A stretch of DNA of 64,000 nucleotides from Lytechinus pictus. Its lineage: Eukaryota. Made by a program: the position numbers and the translations under genes. Where the stretch lies: contig NC_087247.1 in NCBI RefSeq assembly GCF_037042905.1, positions 38,378,001-38,442,000 on the forward strand. Direction: 5' to 3'. This document shows, one piece after another, positions 848 to 35,863 of the stretch; position 1 is the stretch's first letter; each line of letters opens with the position of its first letter. The notes under the pieces are model-generated. The model saw only the letters and a program-made list of their open reading frames with translations. It was not told the origin of the DNA and searched no databases.

Positions 848-878
<31 letters not shown>

Positions 879-5425: not shown

Positions 5426-5780
5426 AATAGCAGTAGCAGCGACAGTAGTAGTAGTAGTAGAACAGNNNNNNNNNNNNNNNNNNNNNNNNNNNNNNNNNNN
5501 NNNNNNNNNNNNNNNNNNNNNNNNNNNNNNNNNNNNNNNNNNNNNNNNNNNNNNNNNNNNNNNNNNNNNNNNNNNNNNNNNNNNNNNNNNNNNNNNNNNN
5601 NNNNNNNNNNNNNNNNNNNNNNNNNNNNNNNNNNNNNNNNNNNNNNNNNNNNNNNNNNNNNNNNNNNNNNNNNNNNNNNNNNNNNNNNNNNNNNNNNNNN
5701 NNNAGTAGCAGCAGTAGTAGTAGAGGTAGAAGTATAAGTAGTAGTAGAAGAAGAAGTAGTAGTAGTACTAATAGTAGTAA

Positions 5781-5824
<44 letters not shown>

Positions 5825-5825
5825 T
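5426..5825. repeat. (AGT)n microsatellite spanning the assembly gap
   Basis: AGT runs on both sides of the N block. Confidence 0.9.
5466..5703. other. Assembly gap (238 N)
   Basis: Run of N. Confidence 1.
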
Positions 5826-6064
5826 AATTATTGCATCACTATCGCTGCTCAGAGGTGCGTTGCTGCGAATGAAGTTTTTTTTAATCAAAACATAATTCAT
5901 TGCAATGTGGTATATTTTCTGGAGGATTTGAAAAAGAAAATAGATGACAAGAGTTTGGTTCCAGAAAAAAATGGATTAGAAATAATAACAATAATAACAA
6001 TGGATTCTTGTAAAGCGTAAACGTCTGCCAGGCATGACGCTCATGGCGCTATGTACAATCATAC

Positions 6065-7125: not shown

Positions 7126-7817
7126 AAATAAATAAAATGTTACATATTCATATAAATCACATTAAAAAGTAGATATATTAATATCAATATTACAACACAT
7201 GATACGGGAATATCCAATGAATGTAAGTTGAATTCGCCATAAAAATAAATTATGAGTTGAAGTCACTCAATCCTAAATAAAAAAAAAAGCTACAGTTATT
7301 GAAAGTTTATTCAATAGAATTTTTATCATCTAAATGTATGTTGTTAACATTGTATCAGAAAAAGTTTCACGATATTTAATTTCTTTCTCATTCGCTTGGG
7401 GTGTTCATTCTGCGAACTTTTCTTGTATGATAATCTGAATAAAGGTTACACACAAAAAAACTCGTCACGTGGAAGTAGTAAAATTATACAGACACGTTTT
7501 GGGAAATGAATGATTTGTATAGGCAGGCTATATTTTCAGACATCTTTGTCAATGGTTATTTTTGTAAGCTCCGCTTGTTCTTTTATAATACAACATTATA
7601 CATGTTTAAACACAACATTTCGTTTGATATATCACTTATTCATTTCTTGTGTTGGAAAAATGTTCTATTAATATTTGTGTACATCTTGCTCAAATACTGA
7701 AGGGGAATGATTGATAAGGTGTATCATAGATAGCATTCTAAATGTCTCACAAATGTTCCTTTAATCCAGCTACTTTTGGAAGTTATTGATTCAGAAGCCT
7801 GATGTTCGAGACCTGCT

Positions 7818-7849
7818 TCACATCTTTCTGACAATAATTTTCATGTTGT
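7818..7849 (-). CDS. Candidate short terminal coding exon of the lectin-kringle gene (DNMKIIVRKM*)
   Basis: Strong acceptor tgtttttcag| with the correct phase, an early TGA, an AT-rich tail and a minus-strand AATAAA near 7306-7311. No homology support. Confidence 0.35.
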
Positions 7850-8517
7850 CTGAAAAACACTAAATGATGTCTCATTTGTACATGTTTGTAACTGTCAAAT
7901 TACTCCTTTATATAGGAAACATGTATATCCTATAGTGTCAATTTATTCAATGTGTATTAAAAGAGCAGTACAGAGTAATATTTTTGCTCATGGTGCCAAT
8001 AAAAAAGGCGATCCCCGGACTTTCATGCGTCTATATTAGACCACTCGACCGCCGTGCCTCAACACACTCACACACAAACACGCACACCCTAGCTAGTACA
8101 CACCCACTCATTGTACAGGGGCGGCGCCGCGATAATTTGAAAGGGGGACAAGGAGACATAAACATGCTAAATGTCACATCATTATTTTTCTTTGTTAACA
8201 AAAGCAGGGGCAATTTAACGTTATGCAATAATTCATACCTCTCATTTTTATACTCCTCTTCCTTCTTTCTTCTCGGTTTTTTTCTTTGTTCTCTACTATT
8301 TCTCTTACTATTCTAAAATTGCCCCTGTCCCACCCCTGGACGTCACTCTGCATGCCTATAAACATCCTCTCACAAACTGTACTTCCCACCCTTTACTAAT
8401 ATACACCTCCTCTCTCATCATCATTCACGCACACATTATGTACTCTCTCTAACACACCCACAATACCCACATCACTCACCCACACACGCAATCATGAATT
8501 ACTACGTGCGATCATAC

Positions 8518-8694
8518 CTCTTGAAAGCAGACCGGCGATGTGCGTCATTTCGCCTTCACTATGTATGGTAGCAAGTTTAGCATCCAGCAAGTCGCAACTG
8601 GCTCGAGCCTTAGTCCATGAGACAAAGTCTCGCTGTACCAAGTAGCAATGAGAGCCGTAGCCTTCCCAATCCGTTGGACACAAAGATCCGGGAG
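8518..8694 (-). CDS. CTLD6, first-half exon
   Basis: [34 protein letters not shown]; no WIGL or WND exons found downstream. Confidence 0.85.
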
Positions 8695-11600
8695 CTGCAA
8701 TGTATATATTAAGACCCATGGAATACAAATGTCGTTCCCTGGATAATTTGAGGGTTTAGTTATCAAACAAGTTATTAAAAAATAAAATCAGACATGCAAA
8801 AACACGTAATTTCAGCTTCGATATATATATATATGCATCGGAAAGTTTGTGGCATCCTCAGAGCGAAAAAAAATACGCTGTAGAGTAACACAGAATTAAT
8901 GTGTAAATTATCTATTAATTATCCATTCTATGGTGAAGAAATAAGTCTCAAACCATACTATGCGGATAATAAGATACCTGAAGAAAACAACTCAAACTTA
9001 ATCATTTAAAAATAGGGCTTCCCCGGATAGACACGACACGGACAATTAAAAAGCAGCATATAATTACCTAGGGTTGTTGGTGCGACAGAAGAGCCAATGA
9101 CATTCTTGCCTGTGTACAAATGAAAAATCATACATTTTTTAAAAATGAAACCAAGAAAGCAGCATGGTTAAAATTACAATATTTACTTCTATTTGTAGGT
9201 TTGGTGATAGATTTTGGAAATGAGGCATTGGTCGCAATAAGCCTGTATTTCATTGTTTCCATGTTTACCAAGGTAAGGAGAGAACAGCAACATTAGGAGG
9301 GTGTGTGTGACAGGATAAATCATATTAACGTAAAATGCATGAGAGTGTGTGCGTGTGGTGTGTGTGTGAGTGGATGAATGTTTGCGTAAAATAGTATACA
9401 ATACAATTCATCGAGGATATTAGTAAAAATTTATCACACGAAGTACCCTTGGAACAGTTCTAAAACTATTACGAAGGTACCAGTAGTGAGTAACTATTTT
9501 CAAGTCCGACCAAAATGATGTATATTAAGTTTTCTATGAAGATAATGAAGTCGATCCTTGTTAATTGATAATCAATCCTCGTTTCAAAACCATGACCGGT
9601 CACTAGTAACCGTCATCAGCAAATTTGCGTGTATGCTAAAATAAATGACTCGTCATGTGACATATTTCTTCTAATCATTTAATCATATTAGTGTGGGTAT
9701 GAAGTAGGTCAAAGTCGAATCGACTTCATTCTATTTGCTCAATGATTTATATCGCATTTGACAGTTTGATAAAATATTATAATGGATATTCAAAATCTTA
9801 CTTCTTTTCTTGCAGATGTAAGGAAACGTAAGATCACACTTTTCGTCGGACCACATTCCGTTTCCTCTTGCCATATACACACATTCTTCAATCCCCTGAA
9901 GGTTATCTGGTTGACCTAGTTTAAAAAAATGACAACAGTAAACATAATTTAATAAAATAAATTTCATATTTTAGTTTGCAACTCGTCGTTATCAATGCAA
10001 CGTTGTAAACACGATAGTACAATGAAAGTATTTCCAACAAACTCTTTCTTACCTTCTAGTCATATTTGTGTAATCATGGTAATAGGCCTGTTACTCATCG
10101 TTTTTACTTCTTGAAACTATTACTTTCTTTATATAGATTATTATAAATAACGTGTAAAAATAAATTTGTCATTATATCAGACAATAACTGATTCATATTT
10201 CCCAATTTTCCCAATTAAAAAAATACTTTATAAAAAATCGAATTCACAATGATAGAGAAAACGGATCCTGTAATTACACCGAATATTTTCAAGGTAAGAA
10301 TATGAAACATGGGCCAATAAGATTTAGACCAAATGAAGACGGTTCTTCTAGAAATGGTATTATGTGATTGTAGACCAATCATAAACCTGTTTCCCCCAAT
10401 GTTTTGTAAAAATGGCAATCATTTATTTAGTGACGATGAAGGTACCTGGTTGCCAATTTAAGTAAGAGAAAGGACTTGCATCTGTCCATTCCCAGCCTGC
10501 CTCCTGAAATCGATCATTTGCTCCTATCCAGAAACCTTCTACTGGTGATAATGAGATCATTCCTATATTAAAAAAGATATTGAGTCATTTATGGATTACT
10601 TCATAGAATATCAGATTATTGATATACATTATTTAATTTGATACACTTGTACTGATTATTGATGATAAGGGTAAAATATAACAATGATGATAAAGTCACG
10701 ATGATATCGCGAAATAAAACAACGACGATGATAACAATTATGATAATATTAGAAATGTGGCCACAGCACAAGATAATCGTTAGACTAACCGACTATAAGA
10801 TTCGACTCCGCCTCGGATAAGATACTGAGGAGATTGGCATCTTCACCCTCACACGCTTGTTGTGCTTCATCGAAACTTAGCGTTGAATCCTGTTCTATCT
10901 TATAACACCATTCCTCAGATGGGTCAGCTCTCCATCCCTCGCCCCCACAAGCTTCTGCATCGTTTCAGGGAAAAATAAATATGAGAGTTAAATGCGTTTA
11001 GGTGATACGGTGGAAACGATTTAAAGTAAAATGGTATTTGAGTGCAACTATTGAATAAATTGATCAATGATTTGCTCCTAACGCATATATTATTCCACAG
11101 AATTGAGGAGGGCAATTATCAAACTGTGTGGATCCGAAATGGGTGTAAGAAAATTCTGTTTGCGGGGAAAAGGATTACATACGAAATATTGTCCTCTTTT
11201 GACAAACATTAATAAGGGCTACGGTTGAAAGAAAATGGCCGAGGGATGATGGGATGTCGGATATTTAATGAATAAAAAACAAATGACAAGCGATGGTAGT
11301 TATTGTTACTTTGGCTGCGTATAATTTGCGTACAGTGACAATTAAAAATCATTCGGGGACCACTTGTTTTAACATTAATGTATGCATCAATTTGCAAAGC
11401 ACAAGTCTATATTTTATGCTTCTCTCCACCTAGAATAAGTGGTAAGCTGGAATGTTCCCCTGAGAGTGGAGAATGTACATACATTTTATGAGGGGAAGCA
11501 CATTTCGAATTCAGTAACAGGGAACGTAATAATAATGCACTAACCATATTCATAAATAACAATATCACTATATTTTCATATGGATATCGATTGATATGCA

Positions 11601-14600
11601 TATATTCGAATGCTTATTAAACAACATAATTCATGAGTGGTGTATTATCTTCTGTTGGATCCCAGGAGATGGTTTACATCATAAGAAACATGTCTTACCT
11701 TGTACATTACACTGAGGGATGTCACATAACTCTCTCATGTACCCCTGTTCATTGTGAGCCGCTTTATACATACAGAATGGAGCATCCGCGATGAATACAG
11801 AAGGATTACGGCAGTAATTCTCATCCAAACCTTCCAGTATAAGATATAGAAGATCACAACATTAATTCAATGCTGCCAAGCACCAGCTTTTAGTCAGGAT
11901 TTGACGCCCTTGTGGCGTTTAGGTTAACATGCGTATATAGTCTATCAGTCAGACTGGAATCGCATATCACATTATCATTACCAAAAGAGGTTATATAACT
12001 CCACCCATTGTTAAAAAAAAAAAAATCATTATATTACATTTTATTTTCCCGACAATGCCCAGCCAGAACATGCAAGACAGATGTTCTGTGATGAAATAGC
12101 GATATTGGCTGAACCCCAGAGAGCACTCTGGCAAGCATTGCCAAATACTTTTAACCGAGTCTGGTGGCTTTAAATTGTAATTGACTCACCAAGAAATCGT
12201 AAGACAGAGAATGGTTGATATCTGAAATTGACATGAAATTATGAACTGAAACGGAGTCTTCATAAATGCCGCTAAGACACTTTCTCTATCATGGATCGAG
12301 CTTGTTACTTTGATGCAACAGAGCCGAGGTGTTGGACTTTATGAACAGAGATCACTGGGAACGTAAATCATGAAGTGAAAAAATCATTTCTTTTTATCAG
12401 CTTTTGAAAAGGTGTCCTAAAAGTGAGCATTTCAGCGATAATCTACAAACTTTCCAGCTCATATGCAGATAAAGATAATGGTTGTTGTACTCTTTAATAC
12501 AGATATTTAGTTCAAAAAGCTAAACCCAGATCGACGATGATAACAGGACAATAACGATTACAATCAGTCTCAAATAATGTGTATACTCGTATAAGTTTTA
12601 GCATGGAAATGGTCAATCATAAAAAAAAATCGTACAGGATAATGAGGATTTCGAGATTGATAATACTTTAACTTGTATTTCCTCTCTCACCTGCATTCGG
12701 ATAATTATCAGGAATCCAATAAGTGTCCTTCCATTCCACACAGATATGACCAGATGCTGTGGTGCGAGCTGGACCGCGGTAAGTAGTGCCTCGGACCCTC
12801 GGATCGTAGCATCCTACATCTTCAGCTGTTTGGTACAGAATCAGCGACATGAATAAAATGGAATGAATCAGCATTTTTAAATTGCTTTGACAAATATTTC
12901 AAGCAATAAAAACTACATAGAGCATGTAGGTGTAAATCTCTGGAAATCTGCCGCACTAGTTCATGTTCTTTTAATATAATTTCGTCAGATTCAAACTCTG
13001 TAATCACCTATTCCTAAATATCATAACCAATCAACACACCAATTAAATACGATCATTCGTTTCTTGAACCAATTAAGGAATAATACTAGCTTATGTATCA
13101 ACTTTTTCCATTTATTGATCTGTATAAACAATTTTGCTCATGTTTTTGTAGTCCATAAAAAGTGTCATGCTGTATTTTGCTCAAGATTACTTTCTATACA
13201 CCGCATTGAATTTTAATTATACATTACATTCAGATCTTTAGATGATGACACATTTGTGATGACATTCCGGCATTCTCGAATATGGTTAATCAGGCTTAGC
13301 ATTCAATGTTTTTTGTATTCCAGCACGAATGGAAGTATAATTTTGATGATAGACTTCTGATATCCCACAATCACATTACGTCCAGTCAGACGAAGCACAC
13401 TTACAACTGCATTCTATGACTAAATATTGTGACCAATCAGGACGAAGCATACTTACAACTGCATTCTAGCACTAAATATTGTGACCAATCAGGACGAAGC
13501 ATACTTACAGCTGCATTCTAGCACTAAATAGTGTGACCAATCAGGACTAAGCATACCTGTATTGTAGTACCGACATTGTGACCAATACGGAGAAATCTAC
13601 AACTGTATGCTGGCACCAGACATTGTGACCAATCAGGACGAAGCATACTTACAATTGCAGTCTGGCGCAAAATAGCGTGTTCAATCAGGAAGAGGCATAC
13701 ACCTGTACTTACTGCGTTTTAGTACCAAACACTGTGACCAATCAGGACGAAGTATACTCACGATTGCATTCTGGTACTGAACAATATGACCAGTCTGTTT
13801 GGTTGTGTATCGGATCCCAAAAGTAACACCATGGACCCATCGCTCCATTCGGATTTCGGCAATAATTCTCCTCCAGCCCTAAGAAGTGGTAAAAAATAAA
13901 AACCTCTGTACAGAATCCTCCATCTCATTTCTAAACAACTAGCTTCATATTCTGATTTTAGTATTTGTACATTATTCGTCTTGGCCAAGATGCCAGTCGA
14001 TTAAGTGAAAATTAATTACTCGATATGATTTGTCTTTGCAGATTTCGATTAAATTATTCGTAGAGTATATAGGGCCTTAATCATGCAAGTGTCACATGTG
14101 AAATATTTTTATTTTGTTAATGTCTTGTTCGGGGATCTTTTAAGTAGTTGTCCATTTAAATAATATCGAGAATAGGTGCCCATTCTATTGCTCTCTGTCA
14201 GTTTGTATTCTTCAAACAAAGTTGTGAACAATTTGATAACGGTAAAAAAAAATTGGTAGACCGACGCTGTTTAACATTTCTACTAGATAAACTTCTATTC
14301 TTTCTTTGATATATTTTTATTTCAATTTCACTATAGGCCTTTATCATGTGAATCTTGGGGATCTACCACCGTCAAAGATTACCAAAAATGGTGCTTCTGT
14401 TTTCCTGCTCACCATATGTTTGGTTTCTCTCATAATAGTCTTGTTCTGGGTCGTAGCCTAATTCCACATCTTTACTGTTCTTAGCGCTCAAGAGACAACG
14501 AGATCGGTCACTCCCGCCACTCGCCGTGTGGTAATTAAACGATTTGCAGAAGAAATCAGCTCGATGAAGACACTCATGGGCACACTCAGAGAGGCTGATA

Positions 14601-17600
14601 TCGCTGATACTTGGTGCCACTGGAAGGATGGATTTGAGCGGCTGCATCGTGAATTCGCTCAATGGCACTAAGACAAAGAAAAAAGGGTATTTTGCTATCC
14701 ATACCTTGGAAGAGGGTATATAGTTATTACAAACCTTATTTGTCCCTCTACAACCCTCAAAATGACCAAGATATGTAATAGGTAAGGCTCTGTACAGCTA
14801 AAGTGCATACACAGTTGAAAATTTCTCTGGGTTGAATTCTTAGTTGAACAATATATCATAGGCTCGAATTGATTTTAACTTGAGCTTTTTTGACAAACCC
14901 CCTACTAAATTCAAAGGTAAATCGTTCCACTCTAATATCACTCTTAGTGATATCCAGATTATACAATTAAAACTAAAAGAACTACAACATTAACTGGAAC
15001 GTGTGCACTTTGATTGTGTTCAGACATGACGGAATTGGAGATATCTTCATTGTAATGTAATAAAAAATTATCACCATTGGTAATACATTGTCAAATATTG
15101 CATACTTTATAATGATATTTTGGATGTGTAACAATTATAATAATCGATACTTTCGATTTCCGCTCAAAGATGGGTCTCCCAAAGTGTATATCATTCATGT
15201 GCAAAGAGAATGATTCTGGCAAATCAATATGCTTACCTGGGTAAAATTCATCGATGAAGTTGACCCAGTCAGAGCAGGTCCGTCCTAAAGAAATGTAATT
15301 TGCATGTCCGCGATACGACATCCCTTTCCCGACATAGCATCCAACTTCAACTGGGTAAGAGTAATATAATTTATTTGTCTTTAATTGCTATTCATTCATT
15401 ATATGTTAGCAACTGTGTGATTTATCATTGATCATTTCAATTAGCATTGTTTCATGATGCTTTTAATTATTTGAGTGAATGGGCTTTATGGCTTACTATA
15501 TTTTGATTCATTCTTTCAATAAGATCGACACTACATTGACATATAGTAATTTACAAAAAATATATAATCAATACTTACTGGTGCAATGTGGGACAAGACA
15601 TGGTTCCTGTACAAGGCCTTGGTTATCGTCTCTTACGTAACACCATGGCTCGTCGTCCTGGCTTGGATTGCGACAGTAATTATGATCCAATCCTGTCATT
15701 ATTATATGAAATTTGAATAGTTGTTGATATCATACTGACCTAATAGAGACATTTTAAGGAGAGTGCCATTAAACGGATATGTATCTTACTGATCAAATAA
15801 TGTGAGCGTGAAGCGCGAAAGTTTTTGATATTCAGACCTAAAAAGGGACATTATAAGTAAATGTTTGTTATCATGATACGTACCTGTCTTGCTTTAACAA
15901 ACAATACGAGCGCGGACATTTTAAGGACTATACTTTAGGAATCAATCAAGAGTATACATATATCTCACCATAGTCATCTAATGCGAGTGTCAAGCGATTG
16001 CTGATTTTGTTAGAATTACATCTAATCACACTTGTAGTCATTGTAATCATGATTAACATACGCATCTCACTAATCAAATATTGCGAGCGCGAAGCGCGAG
16101 CTTAAAATTTAGGAAATTCAGACCTGAAGAGGGGCATTTTAAGGCTTGTTTGCAGGAAATCACGAATATCATACGTATTTCACTAATCAAATGATGCAAG
16201 CGCTATGCGCGAGCTAAAATTTTTGTTGACTCCAAAACCATGAAAACAGGGATATTTTAAAAACTATTTTTAAGGAATTCATTAAGAGTATACATATCTC
16301 ACCATAGTCATCTAATGCGAGTGCCAAGAGCTTACTGATTTTGTTAGATTTGCATCTATAAACACAAGTCATGAAGCACTTTTTGTAGTCATTGTAATCA
16401 TGGTTATCATACGCATCTCAATAATCAAATTTTGCGAGCGCGAGCTGAAAATTTAAGAAATTTAGACCTGAAGAGGGGAATTCTAAGGCTTTGATACTGA
16501 TATTCTTCGTCACCAAAGGGGCGAGTACAGGTCTACTCTAGACTGACTCTAAAAGCAGACATACCAGCATTAGGATACGTGGTAGGGTTATATGGCCGAC
16601 TTGTCGCTTCTTCCCACTTTACGCACGTCTGTCCATTCTCTCCTTCATTCGCTGATCCTCTATAGTTGGCACCGTTTCCCTCATAGCAACCAGTAGCTGT
16701 GTGGGGGTAAGCGAAATCGACTCGTGCATGATTATTGTATCAATAATACTGATGTATCATGTATAATCTTCGATACACTGTAATGCAACAGTGAGAATAA
16801 TGACGTTGCTAATTAGGCCCAAGTTCTCGTTTTCAGATTTCTTCCTCCCAGATTCAATAAATAATTAAATAGGAGAAATATGTATCAACAAACAACACAT
16901 ATAATGGTTATGAATTTCTCCGAAGATGGAGTAAAAATCTAAAGCAGTTTTGGCAGTTTTACAGAAGTGCTATAAACAATATGTTCAGCATTCAAACGCC
17001 TAACAGCACAAACACTGAAACAATCAACAATTTTAGGACTTATGCATGCACTTCGATAATTGTTAACTGGATAATATTATTACAAAAATAAAAGAAAATA
17101 AAAATAAATCTTATATCGGCTATTTATCATACCACCTCATTTACACCACTTTCCCCACCTGTATACGATAATTCCTTTCTGCATTTACCATGATTTAAAA
17201 AAACAACTGCTTTCACAACCATCCTGTTTAAAAATACACATATCTGTAATGAACAAAATACTTACTATTGCACTTGGGGATTCCACAATAGGAGTATGCG
17301 TACCCTTCAGCTTTCTTGTTATAGTAACACCATGGACCATTTCCGGATCCAGCTGGGTTTCGACAGTAATTACCCTCCAGACCTATTCATTTAATTATTG
17401 AATTTCAGAATACTTTGATCTGAATGATAAATATGATCATTGTATTTATTATTGCTTTTTGTAAAGACGTTTGATTAAAATAACGTAAAAAATAATAATT
17501 TGTCAATGATTATTCAGATGGGTTTACATTTAGGGTAATGATATAGGATAACGATGTAGATACTTGTATATTTTCTTATAAGTCACCAGGCACCACGGTC

Positions 17601-26600: not shown

Positions 26601-29600
26601 AGACGAATCAGGCATAGAGATGTCGGAAGAGGCTGTATATGAATGCAAACCTTTTTTTTAGTAATACAAATCAGAATGTTTCATAATAAAAATATGACTT
26701 TAGATATCTTCTGAATAATTGCAAAAAGAACTTTTCGACTATATACTGCATCCTATGTTACCAATGAATGACAAAGGCAATAACAGTTTGCACAGTTTCA
26801 CCAATTCTTTTTATCCCCGAGACATGATAATTAGTATTTGTTTTATACAATATGTAGCTGGATTACCATTGCTTAGTTTGGACATGGAGGGTCCATAGTT
26901 TGAAGCATGGCTTGACCGCGTCTGACGGTGGAATCACGCAACCCAAACTTTTGTGACAACATGCCACTTTATTTGAGAAGGACCGTGTCCACCATTTGGG
27001 GAAAACATACCCCATGAACAGACTAAAGGTCGAGACTATTACCCGAACATCTTGAAAAAAAAAAAGAACTGGAAAACAGTATATTAAATATAAATAATGT
27101 TACGCAATTGCCGTTTTACCAGTTGGTTTCTCGCAAATGAATTTCCTTCCCCAAAAACAGTCTGCTGTCGACCAGTTACCAGTTGACGTGCTCTGATAGA
27201 TCACCTGAGTGCATTCCTCATCTGAGCTAGACAGCCGGTGAATATAGGAAATTCGGCAGAAAAGGGAGAATGAGAAATGGAAAGAGAGAAGGGTAAGAAA
27301 GGAGGGGGTGAGGGTGGCCAGGAAGGGATATAGGTGGATAGATAGATGAATAGATAGATAGATAGATGAGAGGGAGTAAGGGATATAGGTGGATAGATAG
27401 ATGAATAGATAGATAGATGAGAGGGAGTAAGGGACATAGTAGTAAGAGCAGGGAGAGTATAAGAAATAAGATGTTATAAAAAGAGCGATAAAGATAAATG
27501 TAAGAATGGTGAATAATGAAGTGGAAATAACAATAATAACAATGGCGTTATTTGTTAATACACACCCCTATGTTAAATGTACATCGTTTCTAATTTGGTA
27601 ATACTAAAGGTGGGGCCTAACCCCCCCCCCCAAAAAAAAAAAAAAATAATAATGATACTCATATTGATAAGATTAACTACAAAATAATATGGAAGAATAA
27701 AACAATGCTGTCCAACCTCTAGAAGGCAATATCAGTATATAATATCATCAATAATTATTACTTATGAACTAAGAACACAATGTTTTTTTATAAAGATCAA
27801 AGAAAAATGAACTTCTATTAGTTCTTCGTGAATTTCAAATTTCGAATTAATATTCTTTGGGTTTTTTTCCTTTTCTCTTCTCTTTTTTTTCAGATAGAAG
27901 TTACATCTAGGTCACTTACTCCATGCTTGGTTCATTAGTTCCCCAGTGTTCATAACCCGTTCCATGTCCAGATGTCCACCTGAAATCATCCAGTCCACCC
28001 TTTCAGAAAGAACAAATAGTCAAAACAATGTGTTAAAATAGTCAAAATAACTAACTATTTTAATACAACGTGACCACAATGTAGACACTGCGTGCGTGAT
28101 GCGTATACCACTCAATAATGACCAAGCCCCCCCCCCCTTCCTCTATCTTTACGCCAGTGATACCTACCACACTTTTGTATCCAATCCAAAAGGAACCCCT
28201 TGCTTCCTGTACCAACTCTGATAGAAACATCTGTTCTTCTTCATCGACTACATCCATGAGGTTACCATCATAACGTGTACAGTATTCCTGGGTAAGGAGC
28301 AATGAGAAGCAAGCGAGGTATTATTAACTTTATAACAATTATTAGGGTATATTGTATGTCGGACATGTACATACTACAAATAAGCTATTATTTGAGAAAT
28401 TTCGATGCAAATTACAATGTTGAAGAAACCATAGTAATTATAAGCAAAAATTACAATACCAGTTAAAGGACATATTTAATGGGGCTCTGGAAGTCTCCAA
28501 AATTACTCGACACAAAAAACTCAATGGACAAGGTACCGCGCAACATAACGATGACATACGAGGACAATATATCTTTTGTCTTTCCATACACCATTTAGGT
28601 TGTGCTTCTTTGTATCCTCATGTGTCTCTTGTTTTGTCTCAAAAAGTAATTAGATAAAAATGCAGCAAATATGTCTCACTTTGTCAAAGACGGTCTTCCA
28701 TGGGGACAATAAGATACATTTATACACCAATGGACAAAACAAGGGTGGGCAAAGTCCATTGAAGTCATCCATCTTTTTCACGTCGAAAAAAAAATATTCC
28801 AATTGTTCCATTTGAAGTATCCCTGTAACTCTAACTAGCTTAGCCGGAGTATAGTACGTGCGCTATATAAATCGTATATTATTCACATTTATTAATATTT
28901 TCTTAATTGCGTTATTGAGCTTCAAACTCGTGGTTTATCAAATCAGGGAACAACCAATCGTCTTCGCTAACCAGTAAAATTAGCACACTTGTACCAATGA
29001 TACAAATCAGCATGAACATACACAAGATCAACACCAAAGATAAAATGACTTAAGAAAATATTGAGACGGTGTAACGATTGCGTTTAATTTTTGAAGAAAA
29101 AAGAAGGTTTGAGAACTACTCAGATTTCACAGTGTAAAATGAATCGTAATACTACATGTTTGCTGACCTGAGCGTCGTCAAAAGTCATCCAGTTTGTTGA
29201 AGTATAATAACAATTCTGGAATTGCTCTGTCCATCCATTTGACTCGTCACAGCGAACTGGTTGAGCTGTACTCAAAAAGAAGGGCATTTATTCTGGATTT
29301 TGGTTAACATTTTGTTATATTTCAGAACAGCACTGACTAATATAAGTAAGAATATTTATTGATTATTATTTTAATTTTGGCAGTATATATACATTATATC
29401 AAACTATTATAATAGCTAAACAAAGGATTCTGGCTATACTTTGAAAGAAGAATGACATTGTGCCCGGAAACATTACTCGAGAGTGTTAGTAAGAAGGAAC
29501 TTATGGAACTTATACTAGATTGACATTTTGAGAGAAATCATGGTGTTTTTTATTTGGTTTAAACCTCTATCCTGTCGAATTTATAAAAAAAAATCAACGT

Positions 29601-32600
29601 ATTTCGGATTAATACAGGCATACATATTCTGATATTTGTCAGGAAGAATAATTATGAAAATCCATTATCCTAAACAAAGGATTCTGGCTATACTTTGAAA
29701 GAAGAATGACATTGTGCCCGGAAACATTACTCGAGAGTGTTAGTAAGAAGGAACTTATAGAACTTATACTATGATTGACATTTTGAGAGAAATCATGGTG
29801 TTTTTTATTTGGTTTAAACCTCTATCCTGTCGTATTTCCGATTAATACAGGCATGCATATTCTGATATTTGTCAAGAAGAATGATTATGAAAATCCATTA
29901 TCCTGTGAGTATGGCAAACTAACGTGACTAAAACCAATTTAAAAATCATTTGAAATTATCCTGCTTTTGTTAAAACAAATATTGTGTTTATGGTAGGATA
30001 GATGACGGTGTATAACCAGAGTATGTAGTTGTGGTTCGGGAGAGTGTGTTTGTGTGTGAACGCGTGCGTTGTGTGTGTGTTTGTGTGTAGATGAGAGAGA
30101 TATATACACTGTTAAAAACCCGTGATTTTATAGAAAAAACAGATTTTACAGAAAGCAATTACAGAATCATTCTGTAAATTCATAAAACAGGAATTTTTCT
30201 GCAATTTAACAGAACAATTCTATTTAAAAAGGGGAAAAGGGTGTTTTATTTCAAGGACAAGTCCACCTCAACCAAAAATGTATTTGAATAAAAAGAGAAA
30301 AATCCAACAAGCATAACACTGAAAATTTCATCAAAATGGTTGTAAAATAAGAAAGTTATGACATTTTAAAGTTTCGCTTAATTTCACAAAACAGATATAT
30401 GCACATCCTGGTCGGTATGCAAATGAGGAGACTGATGATGTCATCCACTCACTATTTCTTTTGTATTTTATTATGTGAAATATGAAATATTAAAATTTTC
30501 TCCTCATTGCCAATATTAAGTGAAACAACGATTAATTCCTCCCTGAACGCGTGGAATTAGCATTGTTTAATATTATATGGTTCAGTCAAGTTCGTCCGTA
30601 TTGTCGAATTTGTAAGAAATGAAATAGTGTATAATTCAAACAATAAAAAACAAAAGAAATAGTGAGTGATGGACATCATCGACTGACTCATTTGCATGTC
30701 ACTAAGTTGTGCATACTACTCTTTTGTGAAAAATAAGCGAAACTTTAAAATGCCATAACTTTCTTATTTTACATCCGATTTTGATGAAATTGTAAGCGTT
30801 ATGCTAGTTTGATTTTTCTCTATTTATTCAAATCAACATTTTCTGGGGTGGACTTGACCTTTAAGGAAATTTGTAAGCTTCCATACACCAAATACCAATT
30901 TCCTGTAATTTTACATGATAAAATGTAAGATTACGCAATCTGGTAAGATTACAGGTGTTCTCGAGACTCTGCTGCAGGAACTTCTTTTATTTTAAGGATA
31001 AATTTTCTAACAGTGTATACAGAGAGACAGAGACAGGTAGAGAAAGAGAGCACGAGAGAGGGCAAGGGAGGGAATGAGAGGGAGAGGGAGGGGGAGAGAG
31101 AGACGGATGAAGCGAGAAATTTAATGTTACGTTAAATAGTTTTTAAAAAAGATGATATAAATATGAAAATAAAACCTGGGTTAGTATCTAAAACACTTAC
31201 TGAGAGTTCTGTGGCATACATATCCTTTCCTAGAACCACAATCCTCATCGATCCAGTACCAGTTCTGATTATAGCCCATTGCTACACAAGCCTTAGTACC
31301 CTTACTGTGACTAGGACGATTACTAGCCCAGTTCCTGTAAAAAAAACAGGGCATTTTATTAGCAAAGACAAAAATGTGCCTACCTTTAATTTCTTAACTC
31401 GCCCAAGAGCAGCCCAACATTTGCTGTGAAGCTGTTTTGAAGTTGATTAGAGGCCTTTACAAACATATAACTTATCTGTTACCATAATTATTCATACCAG
31501 GTGCTTTGAAAATAAATTATAAGATGAGGTAATTAAAAGCAGATGCTGTGATTGTTTCTCAAACTTTCCATATCTAAACGTCAAGTGGGACGCCTCTGGC
31601 AGTCTCGCCTGTATTATGCAATTCGATATAGCAGCAGTGCTGCCTTTGACAAAAGCTAATGAATAATTATTCACAGAAGAAAATACTATGTCCATTGACC
31701 CAAAATGATATTTGACCATGATCATGTGACCTAAGACATGTGCAAAACAATCATTCATACTTGATTACCCTTATGTCGACAATGATCGATGTTTCATGAG
31801 CTACATCCATAAACTGTTTAAGTTATGAATCCAATCCAAAACATACTCCCAACACAGCCAGAGTTCATTGACCTTTAAATGACCTTTGATCTTGACCATG
31901 TTCCTGAAACACGCACAGGGTATTCAGGGATACATTACTGCTCTTATGTCCTAGTTTCATGAACTAGATCCATAAACTATCAAAGTTATGATGACATTTT
32001 CTCAAATACCCCCATCATGGCCAAAGTTCGTTGACTCTAAGTGACCTTTGACCTTCTTCATGTGACCTGAAACTCAAGTAGGATCTTTAATGATACACCA
32101 TTACCCTTATGCCTAAGTTTTATGAACTAGGTCCACATAATTTCCAAGTTATGACAACATTTCATAAACTTAACCTTGGTTAAGATTTTGATATTCATTC
32201 CCCTAACATGGGCTAAGTTCATTGACCCTAAATGACCTTTTGACCTTGGCCCTGTGATCTGAAACTCAAGCAGGATATTCAGTAATACTTGATTACCCTT
32301 ATGTTCAAGTTTTATGAACTAGGTATATATACTTTTCAAGCTATGATGACATTTCAAAAACTTAACGTTGGTTAAGATTTCAATGTTGACGACACCGCCG
32401 CCGCCTCCGTCGGAAAAGCGGCGCCTATAGTCTCGCTCTGCTATGCAGGCGAGACATAAAGTAAGTAGGGAAATTACATACGGGATGAAAATCATATACA
32501 TGCGTGGACTCTATATAATAACCACATTTCTAATGGGCGCTTCCACCCCAAGGATTGCCCAAGGCGCCTATACCAATTTATTGAGACATTAATGATGCAA

Positions 32601-35600
32601 ATTAAGACTTTCTCAGTTAACAATATGATCCATGCTTCGTGGATGATGTGAGCTGCACTTTTGAAACTCAAAATCAAAATGAATATACAAGTTGTAGCCA
32701 ATTTGGTTTGTAGGAAGCGATAGAAAAATAATTTACACTTGGAATTAGATTAAAATTTTCTTGATCTGTTTAACATACTTACGATAAATTTGGATCATAT
32801 ATTGATCCATCACTCCATACATAAGCCAGGTTACCATTGGGATCACTTAATCCAATCCAGAAATCCTCACTAAACCCACCGAGCTGAGCTTTCAGCCATT
32901 CCTGACAAAATGACAAAGGGATAGAGAGGAAGGTTGAAGTGAGAGAGATGGGGAAATATAAGAAGGAGGGGTGGATGGGAGTGAAGGAAGGGGAATTGGA
33001 TAGGAAGGGGAGGGGTGGGGCAAGGGGATGAGAGGGATGTGGAAGGGTGGGCAGGGAAGTAGAGGAAGGTTTGAGATAGAGAGGTGTGATCATTGAACAT
33101 AATTACAGATATTACAAAAATGACAAATTCAACAAGATAAATCAAGACAGACATTTTCAATCAAATGAGAAGAAAATCCTAAGCATTATAATTATCAGTA
33201 TCATCATTATTGTCATTATTATTTTTATTTGATTTGATTTATTTATTATCATCAATATTCACATGTTTACAGGTGATGAAACAAATTACATAACAGTTAC
33301 ACATGTATAAAAATACTATGGTAAATGAGACCAGAAAATAGCAAAAGTGCTAATCGAGCCTGGCCCCACAAATATTACAAAATGCACATTTAAGAATTAA
33401 AAAAAAAATTAAATTGCAATATGATGGTGTGAATTTATGGAAACAAATAACTTTAGAGAATTCCTAAAACTTTTTCTTGATTTTTTTCAATTTGATTTCA
33501 ACTGGTACTTTATTCCAGAGCTTGCTACCTAGAAAAGAAAGTGAAAATTGGCCTTGAGTTGTTTTTAGTCTTAGAAGGTTTACTTGTTGGTCTTTCTTCT
33601 GTCTAGTAGACAGCAATAATCTGCTAAGGAGTGAGGTAGGTTATTATTACGCAGATCATATCATTATCATCACAATGTCTGATCATTATTATCGAACACT
33701 AAAGTTTGTTAATGATATTAGGTAGATGATTACATTTTCTCCAGCTTTGTCTAGTGAGGTAAGATCTCCTTCTATGGCGTGGCAGTTAGCCCTTGCCTGA
33801 TCCCATGTTGTGAGGTCTGATTTGATCTGGTAACAGTCGTACGTCCCCTGTCGCTGCATCCAACCATTCGGACACGATAGGCAGCAACCTGACTCAGATT
33901 TAAAAAAAAAATCGAGTAGACCAGATATGTTTTAGTTAGAGATTCGACGAGATATAATCAATTCAAAATTGATTAGATATCATTATGTAAAATCAAATCG
34001 AATGAATTAGAATAGATTAACTTTGATCAAAATAAACTCTTTTATTATATTTTATTAAACTAAGGTGATATGAAACAAAATAAGGAAGATTACATTCTTA
34101 GAACAGTGCGACGCCATGCCATTTGTTTGGGGGTAAAATTACCACAAGATGTTTTGATTTGTAATTTGAATTTAGAAAGGACTATTGTATGGCTGAATGA
34201 CCAACCCAAAATTCACAAATCAATATGAGAATACCCCGGTCATGTGGATCATAATTTTTCTGCATGTACTCTTAAAATAGTTGGGCAAAAATGCCCAACT
34301 TTTAACCAACCCTGGGCAACATACTGTCCACACAATTATTGGTTAAAATTTGTCCAAATTGGGTAATAAAAACTAATAATTGGGAGATAAATTTGTTCAA
34401 TTGGGAAATAATTGACAAGAATATGTATATTCTTTTACCAACATACATTACCCAACACAGTGGACAATATGTTGCCCAGCATTTCAATTGTATGTGATAA
34501 TGAAACTTGATTAATAACTATGTAACATTCTTCACTTTCCTGAAAACAGATGCCCTTACAAAAAAAAACCTACGTATTTCTAGGGAGATTTCTGTGAGAT
34601 TCCGTTCAAACATTTGAGGTTAATTATTGACTTTAAAAAATATAAGTTTTCGATCATTTCGTTCGAGTTGGTACCTACATTTTTCAGATATAACATATTT
34701 CAATAGTGTGATGAAAAATGAACCCTTTTTCCTTTCTGCTCAATTGCTTCAATAAAGAATATTTATGAGATAAATTGAGACATAATATATTATTCAAATA
34801 GCTGCGATAGAAAAGACCTGTAACCTTTGGTTTTATCCTTGACTGATTTGTGTCTTAGTAAACAGAGCATTATCACGAGGATCTATAAAACATTTCTATT
34901 TAATCTTTGTGAACGTGTTTACCATGTATATCATCGAGTATAAAAAATATAACTAAATAGTTCAATTATGGCTTTAGTACCACCGTGCTACTGGTTAATA
35001 AAAGGTTTTATTGCCAAGCAAGTACTGTAAATCTCGGCAATGCAGTATTGGAAATGGTTCGAAATTTTACAGGTATCATTTTGTTTTAAGCACTAGCTTC
35101 ATTTATTCATAAAGATGATATCAAAATGTATAGAAATAGCATTTTGCTTAACGTCATTATTGTGCCTTGGCGTTAACATATAACTCCAGTAAATCTATTT
35201 CAGCACTGATTTGAGAGCGTTGAAGTGTTTGTTTCTTCTGCTAATATCCTGATATACAACCCCTAAATTTATTTATTATTGATACGACTGAATTGTCATT
35301 TGCTCGGGCAATCACCCTCTCCCCGTCCAATTCCTTCTCCAACTCGAACAACGCTTGAGATTCTAAAATTATACACTCTTAAAAATGTTGGGCAACATAC
35401 GGTCCACACAACAATTGGTTAAAACTTTATCCAATTCTGGGTAGTTTTACACCAATAATGTGTGCTTTGGGTGAAAACTACACAGTATTGGTGTAAAACT
35501 ACCCAGAATTGGATAAAGTTTTAACCAATTGTTGTGTGGACCGTATGTTGCCCAACATTTTTAAGAGTGTAAACTGGGGATATATTCAAACGGTAACCCA

Positions 35601-35863
35601 CTATACTAAAAGGCAGCTATTAAAGTGAAAAGGAACAGAAAGCGAAAAAAACTACTCTGTTATTTTGCACAACATAATTAGGTCATAAGCTTAATTAACA
35701 TGGAGTCAATGAAGGAAATGTTATTCTAACCCCAAACTATTCCCCCTCTTAATTCAATATTGTTATCAAACCTGACAAATTAGTACGAATTACCTTCGTG
35801 TATAAACAGCATCGATATCGTGAGCATAAGAAGGGGTTTTGAGAGTGGGACAAAAGCCATCAT
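8518..35863 (-). CDS. Secreted C-type lectin/kringle/PAN mosaic protein (SP-CTLD x4-K1-K2-K3-K4a[PAN]K4b-K5-CTLD5-partial CTLD6), at least 33 exons, about 1290 aa; 3' end uncertain
   Basis: Exons in transcript order, all AG/GT-flanked with consistent phases, 3862 nt without a stop: 35794-35863, 33734-33888, 32783-32901, 31201-31334, 29168-29265, 28168-28287, 27920-27999, 27120-27226, 26012-26141, 25453-25535, 24838-24969, 23596-23667, 22992-23024, 22656-22814, 21856-21941, 20661-20814, 20259-20291, 18815-18943, 18310-18408, 17892-18029, 17266-17382, 16565-16696, 15579-15692, 15237-15350, 14413-14667, 13762-13878, 12691-12825, 11699-11830, 10790-10954, 10446-10562, 9802-9915, 9068-9109, 8518-8694. 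Confidence 0.88.
9802..10954 (-). CDS. CTLD5 with QPD/WSD motifs (3 exons)
   Basis: [25 protein letters not shown] / [21 protein letters not shown] / [23 protein letters not shown]. Confidence 0.92.
11699..12825 (-). CDS. Kringle 5 (2 exons)
   Basis: [29 protein letters not shown] / [21 protein letters not shown]. Confidence 0.9.
13382..13795. repeat. ~52-bp minisatellite (8 units) derived from the kringle-4b exon end and splice donor
   Basis: ccaatcaggacgaagcatacttacaactgcattctagcactaaatattgtga units start near 13382, 13433, 13485, 13537, 13582, 13629, 13681 and 13738; the last unit overlaps the exon. Confidence 0.9.
13762..13878 (-). CDS. Kringle 4, second-half exon
   Basis: [39 protein letters not shown]; cttag| and C|gtgagt junctions. 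Not in the ORF track. Confidence 0.9.
14413..14667 (-). CDS. PAN/apple domain exon (255 nt, phase 1-1)
   Basis: [19 protein letters not shown]...CLLS...DYYER, the 4-Cys PAN_1 signature; cttag| and G|gtgagc junctions. Confidence 0.88.
15237..15350 (-). CDS. Kringle 4, first-half exon
   Basis: [37 protein letters not shown]; cccag| and G|gtaagc junctions. Confidence 0.88.
15579..18943 (-). CDS. Kringles 1-3 (two phase-1 exons each)
   Basis: CY..Y(K/R)G..C..W first halves and L..NYCRNP..PWCY..C.(V/I)P.C second halves, at 18815-18943/18310-18408, 17892-18029/17266-17382 and 16565-16696/15579-15692. Confidence 0.92.
15770..16495. repeat. gcgagcgcgaagcgcgagc repeat array with an internal ~350-bp duplication
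   Basis: agagtatacata..tctcaccatagtcatctaatgcgagtg occurs near 15950 and 16285. Confidence 0.7.
19198..19839. mobile_element. MITE with long TIRs and TTAA TSD (Kolobok-type ends)
   Basis: ttaa|aaggatgctccgggctgaaaatatt ... aatattttcagcccggagcatccct|ttaa; about 200 bp of inverted arms; internal 47-bp duplication at 19501-19596. Confidence 0.85.
20661..22814 (-). CDS. CTLD4 with EPN/WND motifs (3 exons)
   Basis: CPADW..HCYF..AQQNC..GGKLASI / YYVGL..FQWTDGT / [30 protein letters not shown]. Confidence 0.92.
20963..21221. mobile_element. TA-flanked CACT...AGTG palindromic MITE
   Basis: ta|cactgtaaacaaatattgggtaaaaat ... atttttacccaatatttttttagagtg|ta. Confidence 0.75.
21650..21797. mobile_element. 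Short MITE, inverted copy of the 55009-55167 family
   Basis: Shares ttgtcggacgttttat..cagtt.ccat.gtaacag..cagccaatc in reverse orientation. Confidence 0.7.
22172..22295. repeat. ~45-bp tandem repeat, 3 copies
   Basis: gctccaaaacttctt.aaata.aaat.aaaatgtgtatatcagt. Confidence 0.7.
23596..26141 (-). CDS. CTLD3 (4 exons)
   Basis: [18 protein letters not shown] / IWLGISD / KWTDGT..YQNWP..QQCGSI / [12 protein letters not shown]. Confidence 0.9.
23891..24205 (-). mobile_element. Full-length tRNA-derived SINE
   Basis: Reverse strand: A box TGGCCCAGTGG, B box GGTTCGAATCC, core gcactcaacccaggtg..aatgggtacc, (TTA)n tail. Confidence 0.85.
27120..29265 (-). CDS. CTLD2 (4 exons)
   Basis: CDESNGW..CYY...MTFDDAQ / EYC..GNL..FWIGY / [14 protein letters not shown] / [20 protein letters not shown]. 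Confidence 0.9.
27320..27435. repeat. (TAGA)n-containing duplicated purine-rich repeat
   Basis: agggatataggtggatagatagatgaatagatagat...gagagggagtaa occurs twice. Confidence 0.75.
29416..29903. repeat. Recent direct tandem duplication (254 bp plus ~234 bp)
   Basis: ctaaacaaaggattctggctatactttgaaag... starts at 29416 and 29670; near-identical except for a ~20-bp indel. Confidence 0.9.
30107..31015. mobile_element. TA-flanked cactgtta...taacagtg MITE (outer element of a nested pair)
   Basis: ta|cactgttaaaaa ... ttttctaacagtg|ta, inserted in a (GT)n/(GA)n tract. Confidence 0.7.
30254..30860. mobile_element. Kolobok-type MITE nested in the element above
   Basis: ttca|aggacaagtccacc ... ggtggacttgacct|ttaa; long inverted arms resembling 19198-19839. 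Confidence 0.8.
31201..33888 (-). CDS. CTLD1 (3 exons)
   Basis: CPNGW..CYQI....TWDQARANC...GDLTSL / FWIGLSD...YVWSDGS / [20 protein letters not shown]...GYVC. Confidence 0.9.
31575..32460. mobile_element. Helentron/HINE-like element with an internal ~185-bp tandem array (tgacctttgacctt family)
   Basis: Subterminal inverted repeat gtctcgcctg (31602) / caggcgagac (32446); 3' hairpin 32430-32455; four internal units ttacccttatg..aagtttcatgaactag. Confidence 0.6.
33225..33615 (-). mobile_element. 3' remnant of an L2/CR1-group LINE
   Basis: Minus-strand [32 protein letters not shown] followed by a UTR and an aataaa(tcaaa)n tail. Confidence 0.65.
34268..34492. mobile_element. Degraded relative of the 35374 MITE
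   Basis: gggcaacatactgtccacac ... gtggacaatatgttgccca. Confidence 0.65.
35374..35569. mobile_element. Young palindromic MITE with TA TSD
   Basis: About 83-bp perfect inverted arms cactcttaaaaatgttgggc...caccaata. Confidence 0.88.
35794..35863 (-). CDS. First coding exon (signal peptide) of the lectin-kringle gene
   Basis: [24 protein letters not shown] has a hydrophobic core; the phase-1 donor G|gtaatt joins in frame to [10 protein letters not shown] of exon 33734-33888. Confidence 0.75.

What the first reader, a model, noticed from the sequence alone, without database searches (positions are those of the whole stretch)
8518..35863. Secreted lectin-kringle mosaic: four CTLDs, five kringles with a PAN, more CTLDs, and no protease or membrane anchor
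Seen: a continuous ~1290-aa spliced frame with a signal peptide and no transmembrane, fibronectin-II or trypsin domain in the window. Established: tandem CTLD arrays typify the mannose-receptor family, and PAN plus five kringles is the non-catalytic part of plasminogen. Inference: a lineage-specific pattern-recognition or matrix scaffold that automated pipelines would probably label 'macrophage mannose receptor-like' or 'plasminogen-like'. Every junction from CTLD4 onward is phase 1, so modules can be skipped combinatorially.
Basis: partly seen in the sequence, partly recalled or inferred. Interest (0 to 1): 0.7.

Follow-up and report, generated by a model that had tools for sequence, protein, structure and literature searches.

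The report
Membrane lectin-kringle receptor, cut by window
The lectin-kringle gene is real and expressed, but it runs past the window edge: it encodes a roughly 2,640-residue membrane-anchored receptor found in four echinoderm classes, not a secreted protein, and the sea urchin annotation cuts it into two gene models.

Summary
The window comes from Lytechinus pictus. They match RefSeq XP_063953055.1 (1295 aa, "macrophage mannose receptor 1-like") exactly: signal peptide, 4 CTLDs, 5 kringles with a PAN exon inside the kringle-4 intron, CTLD5, and the first exon of CTLD6.

"Secreted, no membrane anchor" is an effect of the window edge and of a truncated gene model. RNA contigs splice the donor at 8518 to an exon 10.8 kb downstream, outside the window. 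[quoted passage not shown]

The merged gene has 60 exons, spans 64 kb and encodes 2642 aa. Single sea-cucumber models (2627 and 2623 aa) align to it end to end with the same domain order. Crinoid and Diadema models are colinear with it.

It belongs to an ambulacrarian family of CTLD+PAN membrane receptors and has gained a kringle array. It lacks the ricin-type and FNII domains and the FxNxxY motif of vertebrate mannose receptors. Its function has not been characterised. CTLD4 and CTLD12 (EPN/WND) and CTLD6 (QPD/WND) keep sugar-site motifs. I found no evidence of exon skipping.

The parts
35794..35863 (-). Exon 1: start codon and signal peptide. It ends in phase 1.
   Evidence: P0085 maps exactly. 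Orthologues begin the same way, with a signal peptide followed directly by CTLD1.
31201..33888 (-). CTLD1, three exons (33888..33734, 32901..32783, 31334..31201).
   Evidence: Exon map. Local CTLD profile matches aa 28-158. Pfam Lectin_C hits on exon pieces.
27120..29265 (-). CTLD2, four exons (29265..29168, 28287..28168, 27999..27920, 27226..27120).
23596..26141 (-). CTLD3, four exons (26141..26012, 25535..25453, 24969..24838, 23667..23596).
   Evidence: The older model P0001 uses an earlier donor here and so loses the last Cys of the domain.
22992..23024 (-). 33-nt linker exon (phase 1-1) between CTLD3 and CTLD4.
   Evidence: It is absent from the older RefSeq model P0001.
20661..22814 (-). 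CTLD4, three exons. It carries the EPN ... WND motifs of a mannose-type Ca2+/sugar site.
20259..20291 (-). 33-nt Pro-rich linker exon (phase 1-1).
18310..18943 (-). Kringle 1, two exons (18943..18815, 18408..18310) split by a phase-1 intron.
17266..18029 (-). Kringle 2, two exons.
15579..16696 (-). Kringle 3, two exons.
15237..15350 (-). Kringle 4, first half (K4a). Donor CCAG|GTAAGC, phase 1.
14413..14667 (-). PAN/apple exon: 255 nt, phase 1-1, 4 Cys, lying inside the kringle-4 intron.
   Evidence: Pfam PAN_1. The RNA joint 14413|13878 has depth 29. The same K3b-K4a-PAN-K4b order is found on a genomic contig of another urchin and in sea-cucumber proteins.
13762..13878 (-). Kringle 4, second half (K4b).
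11699..12825 (-). Kringle 5, two exons (12825..12691, 11830..11699).
   Evidence: RNA joints 13762|12825, 12691|11830 and 11699|10954. Exon map.
9802..10954 (-). CTLD5, three exons, with QPD ... WSD motifs.
   Evidence: RNA joints 10790|10562 and 10446|9915..
9068..9109 (-). 42-nt linker exon (phase 1-1).
   Evidence: RNA joints 9802|9109 and 9068|8694..
8518..8694 (-). First exon of CTLD6. It ends at a phase-1 donor (GAG|GTATGA).
   Evidence: An RNA contig ends its match at 8518 and runs on for 255 nt. The first 30 of those map outside the window to the acceptor of the next CTLD6 exon.
8495..8517 (-). Intron sequence that the RefSeq model reads through to a stop, giving the last 8 residues of the 1295-aa model.
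   Evidence: The listed RNA contig ends exactly at 8518 (table 8); read-through was not seen in the rows shown.
1..8517 (-). In-window part of the 10.8-kb intron that splits CTLD6. It contains an N gap at 5466-5703.
123..189 (-). First exon of the downstream RefSeq model P0210 (22 residues, ATG at 189). It is spliced to the same acceptor as the 8518 donor. Its reality was not tested.

Best explanation
The finding is the 5' half of one large Lytechinus pictus gene: 60 exons over about 64 kb, from window 35863 on the minus strand to about 28.3 kb beyond the window's left edge. The gene encodes a type I membrane protein of about 2642 residues.

The domain order is: signal peptide; CTLD1-4; kringles 1-3; kringle 4 with a PAN/apple domain encoded by a phase 1-1 exon in its internal intron; kringle 5; CTLD5-14; one transmembrane helix; a 46-residue cytoplasmic tail.

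The NCBI annotation cuts this gene in the middle of CTLD6 into two models. One looks 'secreted' and ends by intron read-through. [quoted passage not shown]

The gene is the echinoderm kringle-bearing branch of an ambulacrarian family of multi-CTLD plus PAN membrane receptors.

Inferred mechanism. It is a cell-surface multivalent lectin receptor. CTLD4 and CTLD12 (EPN/WND) and CTLD6 (QPD/WND) would bind mannose-type and galactose-type glycans with Ca2+. The kringle-PAN block would act as a protein-binding or spacer module. The conserved tail motifs (YFRS near the membrane, GSFDDAML(R/S)VN at the C-terminus) would direct trafficking or signalling.

Shown: gene structure, transcription, splice junctions in the laid region, conservation. 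Inferred: ligand binding, tail function, cell type.
For: Exact mapping of P0085 on 33 exons.

RNA contigs at depth 29-49, against about 2 for unspliced pieces, carry 8 predicted junctions. One contig runs from 8518 into 255 nt that are not in the laid stretch. Its first 30 nt are absent from the window and occur once in the genome, at the acceptor of the next CTLD6 exon.

I chained 25 downstream exons by splice score alone. They gave an open frame with 14 complete CTLD matches, a TM and a stop. RefSeq P0210, on the same contig, is identical to that chain apart from its own first exon and two extra 45-48-nt linker exons.

Models from other species cross the CTLD6 break: P0091 (72% identity, to aa 2027), Diadema P0104 (56%, to aa 2286), and Holothuria P0280 and Apostichopus P0281 (43% identity over aa 9-2641 in one alignment, same domain order, TM, and the same C-terminal motif).

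The crinoid models P0097 (5' part) and P0238 (3' part, with TM) are colinear.

Kringles group by position across echinoderm classes.

Sugar-site motifs were read from the alignment of the 14 CTLDs.
Against: I could lay reads on only 6 kb of one run. The junctions downstream of the first out-of-window exon, and those upstream of 14449, rest on RefSeq models and homology, not on reads I saw.

One RNA contig stops exactly at 8518 (table 8). A branch there could mean a second form, either read-through or another splice. So a minor truncated soluble isoform, or a downstream-promoter isoform starting at 189..123, is not excluded.

The ligand-binding and trafficking roles are inferred from motifs only. 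No kringle has the Asp55/Asp57 pair of lysine-binding kringles, and the tail lacks FxNxxY.
Confidence: 0.85

Rival explanations
1. Two separate genes, as RefSeq annotates them. The upstream gene would make a secreted 1295-aa lectin-kringle protein ending just after 8518. The downstream gene would start at window 189 and make a 1377-aa membrane multi-CTLD protein.
For: Both models are in RefSeq. One RNA contig ends exactly at 8518, which may mark a branch point. The 22-residue start of P0210 has basic residues followed by a moderately hydrophobic stretch, so a weak signal peptide is conceivable (sequence).
Against: The cut falls inside CTLD6. The upstream model keeps only the first third of the domain and the downstream model starts with the remaining two thirds. 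An RNA contig joins the two halves. Five models from other echinoderms cross the break, two of them full length. The last 8 residues of P0085 are intron read-through.
Confidence: 0.07
2. One gene with regulated isoforms. A full-length membrane receptor would be made alongside a soluble form, by intronic polyadenylation after 8518, and cassette exons (PAN, linkers, kringle halves) would be skipped in some tissues.
For: All junctions from 20291 to 8518 are phase 1, so any exon there can be dropped in frame. The older RefSeq model P0001 omits the linker exon 23024..22992 and uses another donor in CTLD3. There is a contig break at 8518.
Against: No skip joint and no loose end at any internal acceptor appeared in the 6 kb laid, though contigs drop rare variants. 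Skipping a half-kringle would unpair its cysteines. The PAN exon is kept in the Strongylocentrotus, sea-cucumber and crinoid models. Phase 1-1 is the general signature of shuffled modules and is not evidence of skipping (PMC8001218).
Confidence: 0.2
3. A plasminogen-like haemostatic or fibrinolytic factor: the non-catalytic part of a plasminogen relative fused to lectins.
For: The best solved-structure match of the kringle block is plasminogen (E 4e-73). The PAN exon aligns weakly to the plasminogen PAN.
Against: No trypsin domain appears in either RefSeq half or in the full-length orthologues. PAN is inside kringle 4, not N-terminal. None of the five kringles has the Asp55/Asp57 pair. The paralogues and the hemichordate relative have PAN but no kringles, so PAN came with the lectin receptor, not with the kringles. 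The kringle tree does not resolve any tie to plasminogen.
Confidence: 0.03

Closest known systems
Vertebrate mannose receptor family (MRC1, MRC2/Endo180, PLA2R1, LY75/DEC-205)
   Same: A type I membrane protein with a long tandem array of CTLDs, one TM helix and a short tail. Only a minority of the CTLDs keep sugar-site motifs, and one of them is CTLD4, as in MRC1 (from knowledge). Automatic annotation gives it these names.
   Different: It has no N-terminal ricin-type Cys-rich domain and no FNII domain. It has 14 CTLDs rather than 8-10. Five kringles and a PAN interrupt the array. The tail has FDDAML where the paralogues have FDNALY.
Ambulacrarian CTLD+PAN membrane receptors (for example L. 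pictus P0221, S. purpuratus XP_011682128.1, Ptychodera P0165, Holothuria P0211), all uncharacterised 'macrophage mannose receptor 1-like' models
   Same: A signal peptide followed directly by four colinear CTLDs (33-35% identity), a PAN domain in the middle, a colinear C-terminal CTLD array, and a TM.
   Different: These have a free-standing PAN (some also a FAMeT-type domain), no kringles, and a GFDNALY tail motif of the FxNxxY type. The gene here has five kringles around the PAN and a different tail.
Sea-cucumber orthologues: Holothuria leucospilota 'Macrophage mannose receptor 1' (P0280, 2627 aa) and an Apostichopus japonicus uncharacterised protein (P0281, 2623 aa)
   Same: The same domains in the same order from end to end, PAN inside kringle 4, a TM, and the C-terminal GSFDDAML(R/S)VN motif. 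Identity is 43% over the whole length.
   Different: They are annotated as single models, whereas the L. pictus gene is split in two. Neither has been characterised in the papers I could search.
Plasminogen / HGF kringle proteins
   Same: A tandem kringle array plus a PAN domain. Plasminogen is the best structural-database sequence match.
   Different: There is no serine-protease domain. PAN is nested in kringle 4 instead of being N-terminal. There is no Asp55/Asp57 lysine-site pair. The protein is membrane-anchored and dominated by lectin domains.
Ciona intestinalis 'macrophage mannose receptor 1 isoform X2' (P0250)
   Same: A multi-CTLD type I membrane protein that also contains a kringle.
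   Different: It has a single kringle between CTLD1 and CTLD2, has an fn2 hit and has no PAN. Only 27% identity in the CTLD array, so the kringle was probably acquired independently.

Membership tests
Mannose receptor family (MRC1/MRC2/PLA2R1/LY75) | N-terminal ricin B-type cysteine-rich domain | tested here: not met
   The Pfam scan of P0085 shows no ricin-type family. CTLD1 starts at residue 28, right after the signal peptide.
Mannose receptor family (MRC1/MRC2/PLA2R1/LY75) | Fibronectin type II domain before the CTLDs | tested here: not met
   No PF00040 hit in P0085. It is not listed for P0210, P0280 or P0281 either.
Mannose receptor family (MRC1/MRC2/PLA2R1/LY75) | Uninterrupted array of 8-10 CTLDs | tested here: not met
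   There are 14 CTLDs in blocks of 4 and 10, separated by five kringles and a PAN.
Mannose receptor family (MRC1/MRC2/PLA2R1/LY75) | Single transmembrane helix and short cytoplasmic tail | tested here: met
   The last exon translates to a hydrophobic stretch of about 28 residues, then RRQKR, 41 further residues and a stop. It is present in P0210 and in the orthologues.
Mannose receptor family (MRC1/MRC2/PLA2R1/LY75) | FxNxxY internalisation motif in the tail | tested here: not met
   The tail has GSFDDAML at the position where the paralogues have GFDNALY.
Plasminogen / HGF family | Trypsin-like serine protease (or pseudo-protease) domain after the kringles | tested here: not met
   No PF00089 hit in P0085. 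The precomputed Pfam lists of P0210, P0280 and P0281 lack it.
Plasminogen / HGF family | N-terminal PAN domain followed by tandem kringles | tested here: not met
   The kringles are present (5 Pfam stretches), but PAN lies inside kringle 4 and four CTLDs precede the block.
Ambulacrarian CTLD+PAN membrane receptor family (unnamed) | Signal peptide, colinear N-terminal four CTLDs, central PAN, colinear C-terminal CTLD array and TM | tested here: met
   P0165 aligns at 7-564 and 1004-2004 to both ends of the model, including the TM region. P0213 and P0221 behave the same way.
Echinoderm CTLD-kringle receptor orthogroup (P0280, P0281, P0092, P0104, P0097+P0238) | End-to-end colinearity with the same domain order, PAN between the halves of kringle 4, and a conserved C-terminal motif | tested here: met
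   One alignment over aa 9-2641 at 43% identity, with identical domain strings. Position-wise kringle clades. In the crinoid model the K4a half is not in the predicted protein.

The most novel reading that the evidence does not exclude
The PAN domain nested in a surface loop of kringle 4 may be a constitutive domain-in-domain insertion, kept since before crinoids and eleutherozoans split. It would form a composite ligand-binding unit that lets one receptor couple Ca2+-dependent glycan recognition (CTLD4, 6, 12) with recognition of a protein ligand. That would be a receptor type with no vertebrate counterpart, and it would also be a preserved example of exon shuffling into an intra-domain phase-1 intron.
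Probability: 0.3. Interest if true: 0.6.

Novelty: new variant of a known kind. Interest (0 to 1): 0.45.

Why it matters
There are three reasons.

1. It corrects an annotation. In L. pictus a single receptor gene of about 2640 residues is filed as two genes cut inside a lectin domain. The Strongylocentrotus, Diadema and crinoid models found for it are also partial. Anyone counting "secreted lectins" or immune receptors in urchins would be misled.

2. It defines a conserved but unstudied echinoderm receptor. The protein combines the multi-CTLD plan of mannose receptors with a five-kringle array and a PAN domain nested in a kringle. It lacks the ricin, FNII and FxNxxY features that define the vertebrate family.

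3. It is testable. L. pictus is a laboratory urchin, so localisation, knock-out and glycan-binding experiments are feasible. A 2026 review notes that mannose-receptor-like genes induced by LPS in sea-cucumber coelomocytes remain uncharacterised (PMC13673367).

Tried and rejected
- Pfam on single exons gave weak or no hits because each domain is split over 2-4 exons. I used the RefSeq proteins and local profiles instead.
- My first hand-built model missed four small exons and misplaced the kringle-4a donor. Exact mapping of P0085 corrected this.
- The look-up of encoding contigs found no record for P0001.
- AlphaFold2 on kringle 4 plus PAN with a 4-row alignment failed (mean pLDDT 37). There is therefore no structural statement on how PAN sits in the kringle, and I ran no fold search.
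- The only run offered (X1) is not on record as RNA. I treat it as RNA because its contigs carry GT-AG joints at about 20 times the depth of the unspliced pieces.
- Reads could be laid on 6 kb only, so the 5' exons, the downstream exons and the exon at 189..123 were not checked against reads.
- The kringle tree (84 columns) does not resolve any relation to plasminogen or HGF. ROR and Kremen sequences were not in hand.
- Literature searches for a CTLD-kringle receptor in echinoderms or other invertebrates found nothing specific.
- I considered and set aside the idea that the tail carries a classical dileucine or YxxPhi signal; the spacing does not fit.
Full report
**What is in the window**

The window is G000:C3:38378001-38442000 of an 812-Mb genome. 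The cluster look-up identifies the organism as Lytechinus pictus.

On the minus strand, stop-to-stop frames between 35863 and 8495 carry the Cys/Trp patterns of C-type lectin domains (CTLDs), kringles and one PAN domain. I chained them with GT-AG sites into an open frame.

A search with the PAN exon returned a 100%-identical protein, P0001. Its cluster holds RefSeq XP_054749960.1 (984 aa) and XP_063953055.1 (P0085, 1295 aa). Both are named "macrophage mannose receptor 1-like [Lytechinus pictus]".

P0085 maps with 100% identity onto 33 exons from 35863 to 8495. Pfam finds 5 Lectin_C stretches, 5 Kringle stretches and 1 PAN_1 in it, and no fn2, ricin or Trypsin domain.

The PAN exon (14667..14413, 255 nt) is phase 1-1. 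It lies in the phase-1 intron that splits kringle 4 (K4a 15350..15237, K4b 13878..13762). All junctions from exon 20291 to 8518 are phase 1.

**Transcription**

The single run offered (X1) is not labelled as RNA. Its contigs nevertheless carry GT-AG joints at depths of 29-49, while unspliced pieces have a depth of about 2. I therefore treat it as RNA.

On window 8450-14449 it shows these joints: 14413|13878 (PAN to K4b), 13762|12825, 12691|11830, 11699|10954, 10790|10562, 10446|9915, 9802|9109 and 9068|8694. All eight equal the predicted junctions, and two of them define a 42-nt linker exon.

No skip joint appeared, and there was no loose end at any internal acceptor. PAN is therefore included in the assembled form. 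Contigs can hide rare variants, so skipping at a low level is not excluded.

**The gene does not end at 8518**

Position 8518 is a phase-1 donor (GAG|GTATGA). The last 8 residues of P0085 are translated intron.

One RNA contig continues from 8518 into 255 nt that are not in the laid stretch. Its first 30 nt are absent from the window. They occur once in the genome, at C3:38375695-38375724, which is 2.3 kb beyond the window's left edge and sits at a good acceptor.

I fetched 60 kb to the left. A CTLD profile built from P0085 found CTLD exon pieces down to 27 kb beyond the edge. Further on there is an exon encoding a hydrophobic stretch of about 28 residues, then RRQKR, a further 41 residues and a stop.

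Taking the best-scoring compatible GT-AG pair at each of 25 steps gave an uninterrupted frame with 14 complete CTLD matches.

[quoted passage not shown] It is identical to my downstream chain apart from two extra linker exons of 45 and 48 nt and its own 22-residue first exon at window 189..123, which is spliced to the same acceptor.

The annotation therefore cuts CTLD6 in two. The upstream model keeps the first third of the domain and the downstream model begins with the remaining two thirds. The merged model has 60 exons, spans 64,151 bp and encodes 2642 residues.

**Independent support from other species**

Several models from other echinoderms cross the CTLD6 break:

- Urchin model P0091: 72% identity in one alignment up to residue 2027 of the first chained model.
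- Diadema antillarum P0104: 56% identity, residues 953-2286 of that model.
- Holothuria leucospilota P0280 (2627 aa) and Apostichopus japonicus P0281 (2623 aa): these align over residues 9-2641 at 43% identity. They have the same domain string, PAN between the halves of kringle 4, a TM, and the same C-terminus, GSFDDAML(R/S)VN.

The crinoid Anneissia model P0097 is colinear over residues 12-1699. The Antedon model P0238 matches the 3' half, including the TM, better than it matches the L. pictus paralogue.

A genomic contig of another urchin carries K3b, K4a, PAN and K4b in the same order. Its kringle halves are 82-92% identical and its PAN exon 58% identical.

In a kringle tree, K1, K2, K4 and K5 each group urchin with sea cucumber, and for K1 and K2 also with the crinoid. 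The five-kringle array therefore predates the living echinoderm classes. Any relation to plasminogen is unresolved.

In the L. pictus genome this is the only locus with these kringles. Other kringle matches are at most 43% identical and are not split at the same position.

**Family context**

Echinoderms and hemichordates have paralogues with a signal peptide, 4-5 CTLDs, a free PAN, 7-8 further CTLDs and a TM. Some also have a FAMeT-type domain. None has kringles. Examples are L. pictus P0221 and Ptychodera P0165.

These paralogues align to both ends of the present protein at about 33% identity. Their tails share GFDNALY, an FxNxxY motif like that of vertebrate mannose receptors (motif identity from knowledge). 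The kringle branch has GSFDDAML at that place, plus a conserved juxtamembrane YFRS.

PAN thus belongs to the ancestral lectin receptor, and the kringles were added around it. This is consistent with shuffling of class 1-1 modules into phase-1 introns (PMC8001218), but that origin is an inference.

A Ciona multi-CTLD membrane protein has a single kringle in a different position, probably gained independently.

**Likely function (inferred)**

An alignment of the 14 CTLDs shows these motif pairs:

- EPN/WND in CTLD4 and CTLD12.
- QPD/WND in CTLD6.
- Partial motifs in CTLD5 (QPD/WSD), CTLD7 (EPN/WYD) and CTLD14 (EPS/WND).
- Degenerate sites in the remaining CTLDs. CTLD10 also lacks two conserved cysteines.

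None of the five kringles has the Asp55/Asp57 pair of lysine-binding kringles; kringle 3 has Asp at position 57 only (alignments; residue roles from knowledge).

The most likely reading is a cell-surface multivalent glycan receptor with a kringle-PAN module for protein contacts or spacing. Its trafficking signal would differ from that of its FxNxxY paralogues.

**Comparison with known families, and novelty**

It works like a mannose-receptor-family protein but fails four of the five defining features tested: ricin-type domain, FNII domain, uninterrupted array of 8-10 CTLDs, and FxNxxY motif. It is not a plasminogen relative in any functional sense, since it has no protease domain.

The protein models exist in public databases under automatic names. 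I found no paper describing this architecture. A 2026 review states that mannose-receptor-like genes of sea cucumbers remain uncharacterised.

I file it as a new variant of a known kind, with moderate interest.

**Limits**

Only 6 kb could be laid against reads. The exon at 189..123 and a possible read-through isoform were not tested. The structure prediction of kringle 4 plus PAN failed.

My checks agree with both observations.

Noticed in passing
window 13382-13772: A minisatellite of period 52 with 7.7 copies starts right after the kringle-4b donor. Its units resemble the exon-end/intron-start sequence.
   Followed up: partly
L005:156-424 (about 9.6-9.8 kb left of the window): A tandem duplication of period 138 (2 copies, 96% identical) repeats the 3' end of the exon encoding the start of CTLD10 together with its donor region. 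Translated copies of the '...GGWE.FGSYCYLVG' exon end are visible in the frames. This is the same kind of exon-junction duplication as the array at 13382-13772.
   Followed up: partly
L002:2600-5182 (intron between the first two exons of CTLD11): An 861-residue open frame on the gene's strand has reverse-transcriptase motifs (YADD) and an endonuclease-like N-terminal part. It looks like a LINE-type retrotransposon and explains the 6.5-kb intron.
   Followed up: no
window 23596-23667 and 22992-23024: The older RefSeq model XP_054749960.1 (P0001) uses an earlier donor in the last exon of CTLD3, which removes the final conserved Cys, and it omits the 33-nt linker exon. This is either a predicted or a real alternative form. 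P0001 also differs from the window by a few residues, presumably polymorphisms.
   Followed up: no
window 5466-5703: An assembly gap (238 N) flanked by low-complexity sequence lies inside the 10.8-kb intron. It was left untouched.
   Followed up: no
L007:7796-8110 (about 42 kb left of the window, minus strand): An open frame resembling the ligand-binding domain of a Cys-loop ligand-gated ion channel. It is probably the next gene downstream.
   Followed up: no
merged protein residues 1819-1962 (CTLD10, outside the window): CTLD10 lacks two of the conserved cysteines and all sugar-site motifs, so it is a degenerate domain within the array.
   Followed up: no
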